DNA of 64,000 nucleotides, taken from the IMG/VR virus record IMGVR_UViG_3300034682_000176, positions 124,001-188,000 of that record; one strand, 5' to 3'. Of this stretch, positions 3,106 to 43,705 are shown piece by piece. Within the stretch, counting starts at the first letter, position 1. Each line of letters opens with the position of its first letter. The translations under genes were made by a program, and so were the position numbers. The notes under the pieces were generated by a model. The model was not told the origin of the DNA. It did no database searches and saw only the letters and a list, made by a program, of their open reading frames with translations.

Positions 3106-3123
3106 TACACATATACAAAGTGT
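3106..3123 (+). promoter_or_regulatory. putative early promoter motif YACAYATATA-N4-RYGW
   Basis: tacacatata-caaa-gtgt; motif recurs upstream of at least 9 genes. Confidence 0.65.
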
Positions 3124-24899: not shown

Positions 24900-24920
24900 A
24901 TGGAAACCGTGCATAGTTGA
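24900..24920 (+). pseudogene. orphaned gene start (METVHS*), duplicate of the downstream gene's N-terminus
   Basis: SD aggag then ATG GAA ACC GTG; the gene at 25948 also starts METV. Confidence 0.55.
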
Positions 24921-25042
24921 CAATGTGTCAGACGGCTGCTGCCGCCAGTAGTTGCGGGTCAGTATGGTGTTTTAGACACCATACTGACTTTCACTCTACT
25001 CAACTTAGACGGTTAAGGTTTTACTATTTAAGGGTGTTGCAA

Positions 25043-25906
25043 ATGGATAACAACTTAACACGAGACGACAAAGACAAAGTAGGCCTTTACATTGTCCGAA
25101 ACAAGACAACTAAAGAGTTCTACCTTGGGAGCGGTCGTCTGGTTCAGAGACTGAAATATCACGAACGCGAATTGACCAACAACCGTCACATAAACCACAA
25201 ACTACAGAAATCTTTCAACAAAAACCCTGATATGGAATTTGTTGCTACAATTATAGATCTAGAAGGTTTGACTGTGGAAGATAATCGAAAACTTGCGTTA
25301 GGGAGTGAGCAAGTTTTTATCGATAAATTTAAAGATAGTTCTCTATTGCTAAATTTAGCTATGAAAGTCGACAACCCTACGTTTGGGACCAATCTTTCAG
25401 CAGACCATAAAGAAAAAATTAGTAAGGGGGTTAAAGAAAGATGGAGCAATATGTCTGATGAAGAAAAGAAATCCCACAGTGAAAAAATAAGTAAGGCTCA
25501 GAACGAACACTGGTCTAAGATACCAAAAGAAGAAAAAGAAGCCAGAATAGAAACGCTTAGACATGCAAATATTGGGGTTCCTCTATCTGACAAACGTAAA
25601 AAAGAAGTAAGTGACTTCTTTAGAGGTAAAAACCTAACCTCCTCTCATAAAGAAAAGATAGGCAACGCGTTAAAAGGGAAACCTAAAAATCCCGATGCTG
25701 TTAAGAACGCAGTTAACGCTAGAAAAGAAAAGGGTTCTTACGGCCCTAATGAAAACCAGATGCGGTTATGCGGACAGCCGGTTACCGTCGATGGTGAATT
25801 TTTTGTTAGTGTGTCCGCATGTGCAAAGGCTAAGAATGTTTCTCGCCAAACAGTCATAAATAGAGTTCGTAACAACAACTTTCCTGGCTGGGCTCAAAAC
25901 TCTTAA
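25043..25906 (+). mobile_element. free-standing GIY-YIG homing endonuclease with NUMOD3-like repeats and C-terminal HTH
   Basis: GLY-x10-YLGS, R---H and HINHKLQ-SFNK motifs; repeated H/K-KEKIS/G motifs; markedly AT-rich compared with its flanks. Confidence 0.88.
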
Positions 25907-33747: not shown

Positions 33748-33784
33748 TCCCTACCCTGCTGTGCGAAAGCCAGCAGGGTAGGGA
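33748..33784 (+). terminator. hairpin terminator
   Basis: tccctaccctgctg / cagcagggtaggga. Confidence 0.7.
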
Positions 33785-33812
33785 TGTCTTGTGCATTTGT
33801 TGTTTTTTGAAC

Positions 33813-33830
33813 TACACATATACACAGTGA
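33813..33830 (+). promoter_or_regulatory. putative early promoter motif
   Basis: tacacatata-caca-gtga. Confidence 0.65.
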
Positions 33831-33863
33831 TAACAACTGTGTACTGTAAAAAGGAGTTTCACA

Positions 33864-34777: not shown

Positions 34778-35275
34778 ATGACTATCTCTATGATTTTGGC
34801 CACCACAGCAGATGGTGGTATGGGGCTGGACAACGCCTTGCCATGGAAACACATCCCTGGCGATATGGTCTGGTTTCGCAAACACACCCTGAACAAGATG
34901 GTGGTGATGGGTCGCAAAACCTGGGCATCCTTGCCCAAGCGTCCTTTGCCCAACCGTGTCAATGTGGTGCTGTCGCTCAGTGACGTACCTGACGCAGACT
35001 TCACCGTGGCGCCTGTGCTGGACAACCCAGCTGCTGTTGTGGAAAGTCTGAAGGCTTTGGCTGGTGACATGGAAATCGTGATCATCGGCGGCGCTGTGGT
35101 CTACAGCTATCTGTGGCCATTTGTGAACAAAGTCTACCACACCTGTGTCAAGCAAGACTACCCTGCTGACACGTTCTTCAAGATCACTGACGATCACCTC
35201 CAGGGTTGGCACAAAGAAACCGTCCAAGAGTGCGATCTCTGTGCTTTCCGTATCTACACCCGTCCCACCTCCTAA
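34778..35275 (+). CDS. folA: dihydrofolate reductase
   Basis: G--NALPW--PGD--WF, VMGRKTW-SLP-RPLPNR-NVVLS and IIGG motifs. Confidence 0.95.
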   Translation: MTISMILATTADGGMGLDNALPWKHIPGDMVWFRKHTLNKMVVMGRKTWASLPKRPLPNRVNVVLSLSDVPDADFTVAPVLDNPAAVVESLKALAGDMEIVIIGGAVVYSYLWPFVNKVYHTCVKQDYPADTFFKITDDHLQGWHKETVQECDLCAFRIYTRPTS

Positions 35276-35283
35276 GTATCACC

Positions 35284-35898
35284 ATGTCCAACGCAATTGC
35301 TGACAACGACATCCGCATCGACTTCACCAAGGCGGCAGAAGATCCAAGCCTGATGGGGATGATCTTCATGAACCAAACATTCAAGTTTCCACACACCGTG
35401 GGTTTGATACACCCACAAAGCACGACGGTTGACACCAACATCATCTATGTGCCTCGTGAAGACTCGCACACATCGCCACACTTTTGGTTCAACCAACAGT
35501 CGGCGAAAAATTTGCAGCCGGTCGGGATCATTTTGACGTTTCAGGAAAATGGTCATTTCACTTCGCGCTCAGTGACTTTGAACTGCATCGAAGCGGCAGA
35601 GTTCATGAAGAGTCGCTCCAGCTGTTCATTCACGATGGGCAGCTACTTGGAAGAGAAGAACCACTACGACCAAATCGACGACTTTGTCGGTCGCTTGAAT
35701 TTGGCCGCTGTGCGTTGGATGAGTAAGCAACGAGGCATCGAGCCTACAGACGTTGTTCGCAAATACAGCGTCAAGGTCAATCACCTGGATGTCAAAACCT
35801 ATCAACTGGCTCGCCTGGATGTCCACCACCAAGGATCTAAAAAGGATATCCAAGTGGGCCACCGTGTCTTCAACGTTCGGTTGACCACCGTCTCCTAA
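35284..35898 (+). CDS. hypothetical protein, paralog A
   Basis: C-terminus HRVFNVRLTTVS matches the next gene. Confidence 0.75.
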   Translation: MSNAIADNDIRIDFTKAAEDPSLMGMIFMNQTFKFPHTVGLIHPQSTTVDTNIIYVPREDSHTSPHFWFNQQSAKNLQPVGIILTFQENGHFTSRSVTLNCIEAAEFMKSRSSCSFTMGSYLEEKNHYDQIDDFVGRLNLAAVRWMSKQRGIEPTDVVRKYSVKVNHLDVKTYQLARLDVHHQGSKKDIQVGHRVFNVRLTTVS

Positions 35899-35910
35899 AG
35901 GGAAGTTCTT

Positions 35911-36519
35911 ATGCAACTCAACCTCAACATCCTCAACACCAAGGAACCCATCGACTACTTTAAGTTGATCGACGATCCAAACTTTTACGCACTGTCGTTT
36001 GTGCGACAAAGTGTGGATTTCCAAAACCACCGCCATAACGGCACCGACTTTGACGTTGAAACCGTTTTTATTCGACACCGACTGACAGAATCGGTTATGA
36101 CGCGTTTGTGCTACGCCCAAGCCGATCAAAACCTGATTCCCATGGCGATCAGCTTGACGGTGCGAGAAAACGACAACATCCCGCCACAGACCAACACTTT
36201 CTCGTTCATCGACATCTCCAAAGCTATCGTCAGCCACCGCTCGATGAAGGTGTCGTTGGGTGCCTTTATCAAACAGCGCACGACTTGGGGTTCTGTGCTG
36301 CAGTTTCTGGACAAGTTGCGCTCGGCAGCCGCTGTGCTGCACGCTGCCAAGTTGGGTATCGAACCTGACGAAATCTTCAAGCACTACAACGTGACCGTGA
36401 ACATTGAAGATGTTGACGGTTATCAAACACGCACGCTGGAAGTCCATGATCCCTTTAGCGAATATGGCTACGCTGTGCCACATCGCATTTTCAACGTTCA
36501 ACTGACCGCCATCTCCTAA
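35911..36519 (+). CDS. hypothetical protein, paralog B
   Basis: C-terminus HRIFNVQLTAIS. Confidence 0.75.
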   Translation: MQLNLNILNTKEPIDYFKLIDDPNFYALSFVRQSVDFQNHRHNGTDFDVETVFIRHRLTESVMTRLCYAQADQNLIPMAISLTVRENDNIPPQTNTFSFIDISKAIVSHRSMKVSLGAFIKQRTTWGSVLQFLDKLRSAAAVLHAAKLGIEPDEIFKHYNVTVNIEDVDGYQTRTLEVHDPFSEYGYAVPHRIFNVQLTAIS

Positions 36520-36533
36520 AAGGAAAAACTCCT

Positions 36534-36815
36534 ATGTCCATCAACGAAACCTCCAACACCGTGCAAACTTCCAACGATTGCCCTACCATGCCCACCAAGG
36601 TCGTGATCGAACTGTTCGACGGCTGCGTCAGCAAGGTCACTGCCGACAACCCTCTGGAAGTGGTGGTGCTCGATCGCAACATCGGTGAAGGTGCCGACGT
36701 GATCAAGGTCGACGGTGAAGATGTGGCGTTCCATCGCTTTGGTGCCGAAGTCGACGATGATGTCTGCCAAGCCGTCTTCAAGGAAATCGACGACTACGAA
36801 AACCAGCCCGACTAA
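36534..36815 (+). CDS. small acidic hypothetical protein (93 aa)
   Basis: SD aagga; D/E rich. Confidence 0.75.
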   Translation: MSINETSNTVQTSNDCPTMPTKVVIELFDGCVSKVTADNPLEVVVLDRNIGEGADVIKVDGEDVAFHRFGAEVDDDVCQAVFKEIDDYENQPD

Positions 36816-36866
36816 CCAGTATTCTGAGTGTGGTGATTTAACCACACTTCGAGTATTTAGTGAGAT

Positions 36867-37235
36867 CGCTTACCCACCCCAACCGGCATGCACTATACTC
36901 TTGCCAATCTTCAGGCCGCAGCGTTGCGCCGGAGCCAAGTCAAAAGAAAGGAATTGGTGTGCTGAGGAGTATCTAGCCGTTAGGAGCGGCCATCCAGACC
37001 TTGTTACCACCTGATAGGCCCGCAGACACACTTGCATAGTGCCTTGGTACAAGTCAAGCTTCTATATAAGCATGGTTGTTGTGTACGACCTTTGTTATCG
37101 CGTGAAGCACGGACGTAGCTGTCCATTAAAACTGCTCTGTGTACCCGACTACAGGTTAGCGGGGGCTTGGGAACGTATCCACGGAAGACAGCCTACATCT
37201 CCACTGCGGGATGTAGGCTGGGCTTTTTCTTTTTT
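36867..37235 (+). ncRNA. candidate structured noncoding RNA ending in a terminator
   Basis: no credible ORF; nested complementary segments (see findings); strong terminator at 37189-37235. Confidence 0.5.
37189..37235 (+). terminator. intrinsic terminator
   Basis: cagcctacatc / gatgtaggctg plus T-run. Confidence 0.8.
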
Positions 37236-37297
37236 GCTGTTTCGATCCTGTGAGGTCAGAGAGGAATTGTCCCTATCGAAAAAGCAGGAGTCTGTGT

Positions 37298-37960
37298 ATG
37301 TCTGTGTTGACGGTAAACAAAACGAATTTGCACGTGTTACAGCGTGTTTTGGACACGGGTGAGGGAAAGATACCAGCCAGCTACAAAGAGCTCTCTACGG
37401 CTCTTAGATCGCGTTCTGAGCTGGTTGTGGTGGTGCGTCCTTGGATCACTGGACCGATTGATTTGGATGGGATGGTGCAAGCCATCGATTTCAAGACCAG
37501 CGACATCTTCAAACCCCGCACTGATGCTTTGCCGGCTGATGAAGTATTCGGCTATGGCTACGTGCACGATCATACCCTGGCATATAGCGGGCGTATCGGT
37601 CTGAACCTGGACATCCCTAAAGAACCACAGATCAACTGCTGGACCTTGCAACAAACCTTGGGCAATGCCTGTAAAGCAAACACCCAGATGTTGACTGGTG
37701 TGGACATCTACCGCGAAATGGACACTTCTGTGTTGATGCAACCTAAAGTGTTGTTCACTCCCGAAAAGTTCAACAAGCGTGTGGTCAAGATCGAGTTGGC
37801 AGTGTGGTGGTGTATGTCACAATCCCAACTCAGTGGCTACATGTCCGCTTTGGCCAAGGCGTTTAGCAAACACAGCCCGCATCTACAACCCAAGCTGGAG
37901 ACCGCCAACTTGGAGTCCTTTGGTTTCCAACACGCACACAGCTGCAAAGACTGTCTGTAA
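37298..37960 (+). CDS. hypothetical protein
   Basis: SD aggag; late-type motif gatcctgtga at 37244. Confidence 0.75.
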   Translation: MSVLTVNKTNLHVLQRVLDTGEGKIPASYKELSTALRSRSELVVVVRPWITGPIDLDGMVQAIDFKTSDIFKPRTDALPADEVFGYGYVHDHTLAYSGRIGLNLDIPKEPQINCWTLQQTLGNACKANTQMLTGVDIYREMDTSVLMQPKVLFTPEKFNKRVVKIELAVWWCMSQSQLSGYMSALAKAFSKHSPHLQPKLETANLESFGFQHAHSCKDCL

Positions 37961-37962
37961 AT

Positions 37963-38004
37963 ATCATAGACCCTGCAGTCCTCATCGGCTGCAGGGTCTA
38001 TGAT
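37963..38004 (+). terminator. hairpin terminator
   Basis: atcatagaccctgcag / ctgcagggtctatgat. Confidence 0.75.
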
Positions 38005-38071
38005 GTACTTTTTGCCTAAGAACCACAATCTCTTAGTGTGATGTCTGGGTCGTTTTTGACCCGACGATGAT

Positions 38072-38089
38072 TACACATATAAAAACCGA
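38072..38089 (+). promoter_or_regulatory. putative early promoter motif
   Basis: tacacatata-aaaa-ccga. Confidence 0.55.
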
Positions 38090-38119
38090 TGTAACTACAA
38101 TTCCAATAACGGAGTGTCT

Positions 38120-42953: not shown

Positions 42954-42990
42954 GTCGTCACCATCTCCAGGTGTATGTAATCAAAAAATC

Positions 42991-43705
42991 CGGCTTAGGT
43001 CCAGTCTCCTAGGATTACGTTTGGTCGTGTTCTACCTCTCTATCATTTATCTTCGAGTAAGATCTTACGAATTTCACTGATGGTATGGTAAGTACACTAC
43101 GGCCCTCCTAGGTGTAGATCAGAAGAAAACAAGAAAAAGAAAAAGAAAAAGAAAGAACAGCGTAAGAGCCCTCCCGCCAATCGAGAGAGCCCACCCGTAA
43201 CGTAAACGCCTCTAAGGGGCTAAAGCCCCTTAGAGCTATATTTTCCAATAAGAACGCAAATACTTTTATCGATTCAAAAAAGCGTAAAAGTGACGACAAA
43301 AGTGACAGTTTCTGCGACATAGCGTTAGACAGTGAATAAGACCGTTTGAGAGCCATCTCCACTCCAGTACACGCTTTTGTGTACTGGAGTGGATGAGCTT
43401 CTTTACACAGACAAACAACCATCAAAGAAAAGAAACAAAGAAAGCTAGGACGATAGTCCAAAGCGGTATTAACAGCGTGTTATGGGCGCGCCGCGCGGCG
43501 CTCGCGGTTGTCTCCTATGGTGCCAAATGGCATTTTGTTAGCAAGTGACATCCTGTGTTTATCTTCACAGACAGTTGCAAAAAAGACCTTCCAGGACTTG
43601 CTGCAAGATGCCTGTGACAGCTGGTAGACACATCGCTTTTTGTTTCGTTGTGGTTTGCTTTTGGGTGATGCCAAGTGTGGACCATCTTTACCTTGTTAGA
43701 ACAGA
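42991..43705. other. large divergent intergenic region with perfect hairpins and purine tracts (possible replication origin)
   Basis: see findings. Confidence 0.4.

What the first reader, a model, noticed from the sequence alone, without database searches (positions are those of the whole stretch)
36827..37235. ~300-400 nt nested-stem ncRNA candidate at the end of the DHFR operon
Seen: about 480 nt without a credible ORF in an otherwise dense genome. A leading hairpin agtgtggt/accacact precedes an outer stem cgcttacc(36867)/ggttagcg(37154). Domain 1 is closed by gcactat(36890)/atagtgc(37036) and contains atactctt/aggagtat, ccaat/attgg and gccg/cggc. Domain 2 is closed by ggtaca(37046)/tgtacc(37140) and contains gctt/aagc, ggttgt/acgacc and agca..ggac/gtcc..tgct. 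A strong terminator follows. It lacks tmRNA, RNase P and tRNA consensus features. Inference: a previously undescribed large phage RNA, possibly processed from the operon 3' end.
Basis: partly seen in the sequence, partly recalled or inferred. Interest (0 to 1): 0.72.

Follow-up and report, generated by a model that had tools for sequence, protein, structure and literature searches.

The report
Conserved untranslated stretch ending an operon

Summary
The gap is real. It runs 36816-37297 (482 nt) between a 93-aa ORF and a 220-aa ORF, and 20 contigs of related phages keep it. No reading frame is conserved. Rfam and ARAGORN find nothing.

The gap has two unlike halves:
- **5' part, 36816-36944.** It drifts like neutral sequence (53% identity to the most distant relative, L016) but keeps unusually stable hairpins.
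- **Core, 36945-37188.** It is 84% identical to L016, like codon positions 1+2 of the neighbouring gene and far above position 3. Yet it folds no better than shuffled sequence (z +1.4).

A well-supported intrinsic terminator follows at 37189-37235.

One-sided changes favour G-U pairs on the + strand.

The element lies inside a transcription unit that starts at a recurrent phage promoter motif at about 33813. It has no such promoter of its own.

Best reading: a functional untranslated RNA segment, either the operon's 3' UTR or a leader of the 220-aa gene. It resembles the terminator-delimited UTR RNAs reported for phiKZ. Expression is unproven. Interest is moderate to low.

The parts
33784..33833 (+). 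Recurrent phage promoter-like motif (TTTG..A, spacer, TACACATATAC, then TGA) that opens the transcription unit containing DHFR and the element
   Evidence: About 26 copies in the 224.8-kb genome, all on the + strand and upstream of genes with a ribosome-binding site. The next copy is at 38072. None lies in 36700-37330 (best PWM score -3.7, against 26 or more for the high-scoring sites).
34778..35275 (+). Dihydrofolate reductase gene (context)
   Evidence: Pfam DHFR_1, E 2e-35.
36534..36815 (+). 93-aa ORF of unknown function, the last gene before the element
   Evidence: ORF list. Homologues at 78-96% identity, plus one truncated 61-aa hit at 40%, sit at the same position in relatives. No Pfam or PHROG match.
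36826..36849 (+). Hairpin directly after the stop codon (9 pairs, no T run)
   Evidence: MFE and inverted-repeat scan. Close relatives change it only to G-U pairs. L016 has a hairpin at the same place with a largely different stem sequence.
36850..36944 (+). Variable, C-rich spacer that keeps hairpins but not sequence
   Evidence: The 5' part of the gap (36816-36944), which includes this spacer, is 53% identical to L016, below codon position 3 of the neighbouring genes. The same stretch has MFE z -2.86 (window), -2.87 (L017) and -4.17 (L016).
36945..37188 (+). Sequence-conserved non-coding core
   Evidence: 84% identity to L016, against 85.5% at codon positions 1+2 and 65% at position 3 of the 220-aa ORF. 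Invariant blocks are separated by hypervariable linkers with 1-2-nt indels. No conserved frame. Single copy in the genome.
36976..36990 (+).
   Evidence: Invariant stem in 13 sequences. The only change lies in the loop. A C-to-T change in L032/L034 adds an A-U pair below the stem.
37000..37053 (+). Composite hairpin H2. The outer helix pairs 37000-37009 with 37045-37053. The inner helices lie in 37016-37044, with a variable loop at 37026-37031.
   Evidence: RNAalifold. In L016 and L017 a C-to-T change plus an inserted A add a U-A pair. G-U becomes A-U in L032/L034. Against it, one A-G mismatch in L032/L034.
37058..37071 (+). Hairpin gctt/aagc with a hypervariable loop
   Evidence: The loop differs in L014, L017 and L016 and carries 1-2-nt deletions in L032, L034 and L035. 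The arms are kept in 98% of cells.
37074..37090 (+). Hairpin ggttgt/acgacc (6 pairs, 5-nt loop)
   Evidence: 100% paired. The single stem change turns U-G into U-A (L032). One further change lies in the loop.
37111..37124 (+). Hairpin ggac/gtcc (4 pairs, 6-nt loop)
   Evidence: The stem is invariant. The loop changes A to G in L016.
37189..37235 (+). Intrinsic terminator: 13-pair stem, 6-nt loop, interrupted T run
   Evidence: Terminator scan. 100% paired in 13 sequences, with one compensatory pair (U-A to C-G in L016) and three pairs that change to G-U. The T-run form TTTCTTTT is a terminator-type word found in 17 intergenic regions of this genome.
37235..37286 (+). Stem-loop in the 62-nt leader of the 220-aa ORF, ending at its ribosome-binding site
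   Evidence: 12-nt inverted repeat, 92% complementary. About 86% paired in relatives. The leader is 100% identical in L017.
37298..37960 (+). 220-aa ORF of unknown function, downstream of the terminator and without the recurrent promoter motif
   Evidence: ORF list. Homologues at 92%, 76% and 34% identity. No Pfam or PHROG match. The fold model is unusable, pLDDT 52.

Best explanation
The stretch is a functional untranslated part of a + strand transcript.

**Proposed mechanism.**
- Transcription starts at the promoter motif near 33813.
- It runs through DHFR, the two 200-aa paralogues and the 93-aa ORF.
- It continues past a hairpin without a T run, which probably stabilises the RNA or marks a processing site.
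- It crosses a variable hairpin-rich spacer and the 244-nt conserved core.
- It mostly stops at the terminator at 37189-37235.

**What the core looks like.** It is a string of short hairpins and invariant single-stranded blocks, not one compact fold.

**What it most likely does.**
- It is recognised by its sequence and hairpins, by a protein or by another RNA.
- It then acts either as a stable terminator-delimited RNA cut from the operon's 3' end, or as the leader that sets how much transcription reads through into the 220-aa ORF. That ORF has no promoter motif of its own.

**Shown and inferred.**
- Shown: it is non-coding, it is conserved, the terminator and local hairpins are kept, and it sits inside the transcription unit.
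- Inferred: that it is transcribed, where its 5' end lies, and what it does.
For: - **Constraint.** The core is 84% identical to L016, against 53% for the adjacent 5' part and 47-65% at codon position 3 of the neighbouring genes.
- **Not coding.** Frames are not kept, and 1-2-nt indels occur at 36942, 37014, after 37050, after 37093 and in the G run at 37161.
- **Variation avoids the hairpins.** They have 3 of 36 variable positions, against 63 of 208 elsewhere in the core. Fisher p is 0.004, and 1.2% of circular shifts do as well.
- **A wider local model.** It gives 10 of 76 against 56 of 168, p 0.001.
- **Strand.** Eleven pairs change on one side to or from G-U on the + strand. One pair would be kept only on the - strand.
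- **5' part.** It keeps stable hairpins despite 53% identity.
- **Terminator.** It has a compensatory pair.
- **Promoters.** The motif lies at 33813 and 38072 but not inside the gap.
- **Precedent.** In phiKZ, terminators inside 5' UTRs give abundant short RNAs plus read-through transcripts (PMC10914365).
Against: - There is no evidence of transcription. The laid runs are contigs with flat depth, and DNA may be present in them.
- The core's folding energy is no better than that of shuffles.
- RNAalifold covariation terms are about zero.
- Relatives span only 73-99% identity, so covariation cannot decide.
- A few changes break proposed pairs, for example A-G in H2 of L032/L034 and C-A in gctt/aagc of L014.
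- Pairing between the core and the terminator's 5' arm is no stronger than in shuffles, so a riboswitch-like switch has no support.
- The more distant relative L018/L019 has a 111-aa ORF with its own terminators at this place and no homologue of the element.
Confidence: 0.55

Rival explanations
1. The core is a DNA-level control region. It would hold a promoter of another, unrecognised class and/or binding sites for phage proteins that drive the 220-aa ORF, and would be conserved as double-stranded DNA rather than as RNA.
For: - The conserved core has no excess folding energy.
- The 220-aa ORF lacks the recurrent promoter motif, so some other promoter may exist.
- The k-mer search found only one promoter class for about 210 genes, so other classes must be hidden.
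- The neighbouring intergenic region 37961-38113 is also 83% conserved, and a terminator and a promoter explain that.
Against: - 244 nt at non-synonymous-like constraint is long for a promoter or operator.
- A strong terminator lies between the core and the gene it would drive.
- There are no repeats or iterons and no recurring words shared with other intergenic regions.
- One-sided stem changes favour G-U on the + strand, 11 to 1 overall and 4 to 1 inside the core. That asymmetry means nothing for duplex DNA.
Confidence: 0.2
2. One reading: one large (300-400 nt) compact RNA with an outer stem and two nested domains, possibly a ribozyme or a new large structured RNA class.
For: - All the stems exist in the window.
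- The 5' arm of the outer stem (36867-36879) is one of the few conserved blocks in the variable part.
- Two changes there keep or improve pairing: A-U to G-U, and U-U to G-U in L016.
- Domain-2 stems are 98-100% paired.
Against: - The domain-1 closing stem and atactctt/aggagtat are paired in only 71% and 62% of cells, and the outer stem in 84%. A G-to-A change breaks a C-G pair in L014, L017 and L016.
- Long-range stems are not depleted of variation: 23 of 52 positions vary.
- The MFE z of the whole stretch is equal on both strands.
- The core's z is positive.
- No Rfam match.
Confidence: 0.1
3. The stretch has no function. It would be a spacer whose 3' part looks conserved only because it was exchanged recently between lineages.
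For: - The locus is mosaic. Relatives lack one or both 200-aa paralogues.
- L003 and L012 share a block of changes at 37029-37049 although they otherwise group apart.
Against: - Identity to L016 is 84%, not near 100%.
- Differences cluster in linkers and loops between invariant blocks rather than being spread evenly.
- The same pattern is seen in L014, L017 and L016.
Confidence: 0.08
4. The gap holds an unrecognised protein-coding gene, for instance the 107-aa ORF at 37039-37362 or a small protein.
For: - ORFs of 38-107 aa exist on both strands.
- The frame through 37100-37160 is open in all relatives.
Against: - The 107-aa ORF changes frame at the G run at 37161 in most relatives and ends inside the terminator.
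- In L016 single-base indels put its parts in different frames, and the ATG at 37072 meets a stop after 7 codons.
- No start codon with the phage's strong ribosome-binding site is present.
- My codon-usage caller accepted no ORF within 36816-37249; its only call reaching into the gap is the GTG-37250 extension of the 220-aa ORF.
- No similarity to the 111-aa ORF that fills this place in L018.
Confidence: 0.04

Closest known systems
Terminator-delimited 5' UTR / 3' UTR non-coding RNA candidates of phage phiKZ (ONT-cappable-seq and Grad-seq; PMC10914365, read)
   Same: - Found in a phiKZ-like jumbo phage.
- Lies between two genes on the same strand.
- Ends at an intrinsic terminator that sits upstream of the next gene.
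- The expected outcome is a short RNA plus some read-through.
- The conserved core plus terminator (about 290 nt) is slightly above the under-250-nt range reported there.
   Different: - No sequence similarity to any GenBank phage.
- No promoter motif directly upstream, so the RNA would be the tail of a 3.4-kb operon transcript rather than a short primary transcript.
- Expression has not been shown here.
3' UTR-derived small RNAs of bacterial operons (general knowledge: released by processing and sharing the operon's terminator)
   Same: - Position at the operon's 3' end.
- Shares the operon's terminator.
- Its sequence is better conserved than the coding sequence upstream of it.
   Different: - Those RNAs are usually 50-100 nt with a seed region and a chaperone-binding 3' end.
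- This core is 244 nt with several hairpins.
- No target or processing site is known.
Riboswitches and transcription-attenuation leaders
   Same: A conserved non-coding block is followed by an intrinsic terminator and then by a gene on the same strand.
   Different: - No Rfam aptamer matches.
- No antiterminator pairing beyond chance.
- The block follows an upstream gene without a promoter in between.
Large structured RNAs linked to phages (GOLLD, ROOL, HEARO, OLE-type classes held in Rfam)
   Same: A long non-coding stretch in a phage genome with several stems.
   Different: - No covariance-model match.
- Smaller in size.
- No multi-domain fold supported by covariation.
- The core's folding energy is ordinary.

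Membership tests
Any Rfam 15 family (4227 models, including RNase P, tmRNA, 6S, group I/II introns, riboswitches, GOLLD, ROOL, HEARO, OLE) | Covariance-model score at or above the family's gathering score | tested here: not met
   No match in the whole 64-kb window. At E<=10 in 36700-37400 only three noise hits, at 12-16 bits against cut-offs of 50-95.
tRNA / tmRNA | Cloverleaf or tRNA-like domain with a tag reading frame | tested here: not met
   ARAGORN finds none in the window or in the whole 224.8-kb genome.
Riboswitch / attenuation leader | Lies in the leader of the regulated gene, on the same strand, followed by an intrinsic terminator | tested here: met
   The core ends at the terminator 37189-37235. 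The 220-aa ORF starts at 37298 on the same strand.
Riboswitch / attenuation leader | Alternative (antiterminator) pairing that competes with the terminator | tested here: not met
   The best duplex of the upstream core with the terminator's 5' arm is -15.1 kcal/mol. Shuffles average -15.5, and 57% of shuffles do as well. Results for L016 and L017 are alike.
Riboswitch / attenuation leader | Aptamer fold supported by covariation | tested here: inconclusive
   Covariation terms are between -1.1 and +0.65 kcal/mol. Relatives are 73-99% identical, too close to decide.
phiKZ-type terminator-delimited UTR RNA | Intergenic, on the same strand as its neighbours, with its 3' end at an intrinsic terminator upstream of a gene | tested here: met
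   The phage is phiKZ-like by its head and virion protein families.
phiKZ-type terminator-delimited UTR RNA | A discrete, abundant short transcript with a defined 5' end | not testable with these tools
   The runs were available as contigs only, with flat depth and no read ends.
   Cells paired: outer stem 84%, domain-1 closing stem 71%, atactctt/aggagtat 62%. Variation is not depleted in these stems.
   The core gives z +1.38 and +0.43. The whole stretch gives z -1.97, the same as the opposite strand.
Protein-coding gene | A reading frame with start and stop kept among relatives | tested here: not met
   Frames shift at 1-2-nt indels, and no ORF is shared by the window, L017 and L016.

The most novel reading that the evidence does not exclude
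The 244-nt core is a new, clade-specific regulatory RNA of nucleus-forming jumbo phages. A phage protein or a small molecule would bind it to decide whether transcription passes the terminator into the 220-aa gene of unknown function. Alternatively it is released and acts in trans in the infected cell.
Probability: 0.15. Interest if true: 0.6.

Novelty: new member of a known kind. Interest (0 to 1): 0.35.

Why it matters
Non-coding RNAs of phiKZ-like jumbo phages are only starting to be catalogued, and none has a known function. This element is a clean comparative case. The non-coding block is under selection as strong as in proteins. It sits between an operon and a terminator-guarded gene, and its four short hairpins and its strand are defined.

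If it is shown to be expressed, it would give a tractable model for how these phages use untranslated RNA or conditional termination.

As it stands it is one conserved intergenic element in a narrow clade of uncultivated phages. Its host and expression are unknown and no mechanism has been shown.

Tried and rejected
- **Known RNA families.** Rfam at gathering score and at E<=10, and ARAGORN, found nothing.
- **Similar DNA elsewhere.**
  - blastn against GenBank phages and plasmids gave no match.
  - tblastn of both neighbouring ORFs against phages gave nothing.
  - Back-translated pattern scans of IMG/VR with three neighbouring proteins gave nothing.
  - Exact-pattern scans of viral, metagenome and genome contigs with three invariant blocks gave nothing.
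- **Nearest GenBank phage.** vB_BspM_AgentSmith (51% identity in the major head protein) has no homologue of the core.
- **More distant relatives.** L018/L019 give no nhmmer hit. A 111-aa ORF fills the place, and the gap is not a decayed copy of that ORF by tblastn.
- **Paralogues.** None in the phage's own genome.
- **Antiterminator switch.** Not above chance.
- **Replication origin.** No turning point in cumulative GC skew and no repeats.
- **Internal promoter.**
  - The TATATAAG word at 37063-37070 is not kept in relatives, and the PWM score is negative.
  - The repeated word AGA[AG]AGGAATTG (36945 and 37258) recurs only at one ribosome-binding site and once inside coding sequence on the minus strand.
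  - TCGATCCTG in the leader is merely a common coding word.
- **Function of the 220-aa ORF.** No Pfam or PHROG match, the fold model has pLDDT 52 so no fold search was made, and the protein atlas gave nothing.
- **Expression.** Read laying on two metatranscriptomic and two 'RNA-Seq'-labelled wastewater runs showed contigs of 90-99% relatives over the gap at the same depth as the neighbouring genes. This shows presence only.
- **My own gene caller.** It misses real genes, for example 24917-25906 and 35284-35898. Its list of other large gaps should therefore not be used.

Full report
**Where the window lies.** The window is bases 124001-188000 of a 224,810-bp virus record with terminal repeats. 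PHROG matches to the 717-aa major head protein and to large virion proteins mark it as a phiKZ-like jumbo phage. The nearest GenBank phage shares only 51% identity in the head protein. The genome has 52.6% G+C and no tRNA genes.

**The observation.**
- The gap runs from the TAA of a 93-aa ORF (36534-36815) to the ATG of a 220-aa ORF at 37298, which makes 482 nt.
- A 13-pair hairpin with a T run forms a terminator at 37189-37235.
- Rfam finds nothing at gathering score in the window and nothing but noise at E<=10 in the gap. ARAGORN finds nothing.
- As evidence for a nested fold the energies are weak. The 425-nt stretch gives z -1.97 on the + strand and -1.93 on the - strand.

**Relatives.**
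- DNA and protein searches of GenBank phages, plasmids, IMG/VR and JGI or GTDB contigs gave nothing.
- Exact look-ups of homologues of the two flanking proteins gave 20 contigs that cover all or part of the gap. They come from wastewater, soil and other metagenomes.
- There are 14 distinct gap sequences at 91-96% identity, plus L017 at about 86-91% and L016 at about 73%.
- All keep a gene-free gap of 476-490 nt at the same place (L014 carries a deletion across the junction with the 93-aa ORF).
- A still more distant relative, L018/L019 (34% identity in the 220-aa protein), instead has a 111-aa ORF flanked by terminators. It has no homologue of the element, and the gap is not a decayed copy of that ORF.

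**Two unlike halves.** Against L016:

| Region | Identity to L016 |
|---|---|
| 5' part of the gap, 36816-36944 | 53% |
| Core, 36945-37188 | 84% |
| 220-aa ORF, codon positions 1+2 | 85.5% |
| 220-aa ORF, codon position 3 | 65% |
| 93-aa ORF, codon position 3 | 56% |
| 225-aa ORF, codon position 3 | 47% |

- The core is therefore under strong purifying selection, while the 5' third is not conserved in sequence.
- Differences in the core cluster in short linkers and loops between invariant blocks of 17-23 nt. That pattern argues against a mere recent exchange.

**Not coding.**
- Relatives differ by 1-2-nt indels at 36942, 37014, after 37050, after 37093 and in the G run at 37161.
- The 107-aa ORF at 37039-37362 changes frame at that G run in most relatives and stops inside the terminator.
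- In L016 its parts fall into different frames, and the ATG at 37072 meets a stop after 7 codons.
- The minus-strand ORFs shift likewise.

**Structure.**
- The conserved core folds no better than shuffles: z +1.38 in the window and +0.43 in L016.
- RNAalifold covariation terms are about zero.
The domain-2 stems are 98-100% paired but hardly vary.
- Variation is not depleted in the long-range stems: 23 of 52 positions vary.
They have 3 of 36 variable positions against 63 of 208, Fisher p 0.004, and 1.2% of circular shifts do as well.
- A wider local model that adds the composite hairpin 37000-37053 gives 10 of 76 against 56 of 168, p 0.001. That model was partly chosen on the alignment.
- Individual events fit the hairpins. 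G-U becomes A-U in two hairpins. A C-to-T change plus an inserted A add a U-A pair in L016 and L017. Loops take substitutions and indels.
- A few events do not fit: A-G in L032/L034 and C-A in L014.
- Eleven pairs change on one side to or from G-U on the + strand, against one that only the - strand would tolerate. This points to + strand RNA rather than DNA palindromes, although inside the core the count is only 4 to 1.
- The sequence-variable 5' part keeps stable hairpins: z -2.86, -2.87 and -4.17. The hairpin just after the stop codon is rebuilt from different letters in L016.
- The terminator has one compensatory pair and is 100% paired.

**Transcription context.**
- A motif (TTTG..A, spacer, TACAYATATAC, then TGA) occurs about 26 times, always on the + strand and ahead of genes.
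- In the window it lies at 33813, ahead of the ORF that precedes DHFR, and at 38072. None lies in 36700-37330.
- The element therefore sits at the 3' end of a unit running from 33813 to the terminator at 37235.
- The 220-aa ORF, boxed in by that terminator and a 20-pair one at 37961-38006, has no such promoter.
- A test for an antiterminator gave nothing beyond chance.
- GC skew and repeat scans give no sign of an origin.

**Expression.** Two metatranscriptomic and two 'RNA-Seq'-labelled wastewater runs hold contigs of 90-99% relatives across the gap, at about the depth of the neighbouring genes. The contigs end near the terminator. Contigs cannot show transcription, and DNA may be present in these libraries.

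**Comparison with what is known.** In phiKZ, 42 phage terminators lie inside 5' UTRs. Most of them give an abundant short RNA (under 250 nt) plus read-through, and Grad-seq named UTR-derived candidates (PMC10914365). A 2026 review notes only that phiKZ expresses non-coding RNAs. The present element fits that kind by its position and its terminator. It has no homology to those RNAs, and it has no promoter of its own.

**Verdict.** This is a real, conserved, non-coding element. It is most likely a functional untranslated RNA segment made of short hairpins and invariant single-stranded blocks that ends at a terminator. The large nested architecture is not supported.

Noticed in passing
window 35284-35898 and 35911-36519: Two tandem paralogous ORFs of about 200 aa (28% identity, same C-terminal motif) lie between DHFR and the 93-aa ORF. 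Most relatives lack both, as shown by a contig joint that skips 35288-36490. L017 has one copy.
   Followed up: partly
whole genome; in the window at 3106, 5383, 13783, 17164, 33813, 38072, 40077, 50881, 63362: A strongly conserved promoter-like motif (TTTG..A, spacer, TACAYATATAC, then TGA) occurs about 26 times, all on the + strand. It recalls the AT-rich early promoters of phiKZ. No second promoter class could be found by k-mer enrichment.
   Followed up: partly
window 37202-37207, compared with L003 and L009: The six loop bases of the terminator hairpin are replaced by their reverse complement in two relatives (CACTGC against GCAGTG). This is a hairpin-loop inversion that leaves the stem intact.
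   Followed up: no
ENA contig of sample ERZ22666135 (no DNA held), downstream of the 220-aa ORF homologue: One relative carries a 409-aa IS605-family TnpB gene (OrfB_IS605, Cas12f-like TNB) on the opposite strand, just after the 220-aa ORF.
   Followed up: no
window 37961-38113: The next intergenic region is also well conserved (83% to L016). It holds a 20-pair hairpin terminator followed by the promoter motif.
   Followed up: partly
window 42954-43705: A 752-nt stretch between divergent genes contains an A/G-rich run of GAAAAA-like units and several hairpins. It was not examined for ORFs or conservation.
   Followed up: no
window 36826-36836 and several other places (for example 269, 26668, 65268): The 5' arm of the hairpin after the stop codon (GAGTGTGGTG) recurs five or more times in the genome, against 0.2 expected. 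GTGTGGTG and ACACCACC words are enriched in intergenic hairpins. This suggests a family of similar terminator-type stems.
   Followed up: no
(sequencing runs): Near-identical or about 95% similar sequence occurs in runs from subsurface, soil, surface, air, freshwater and wastewater samples. It also occurs in runs labelled as single organisms (coded A-D), which may point to the host.
   Followed up: no
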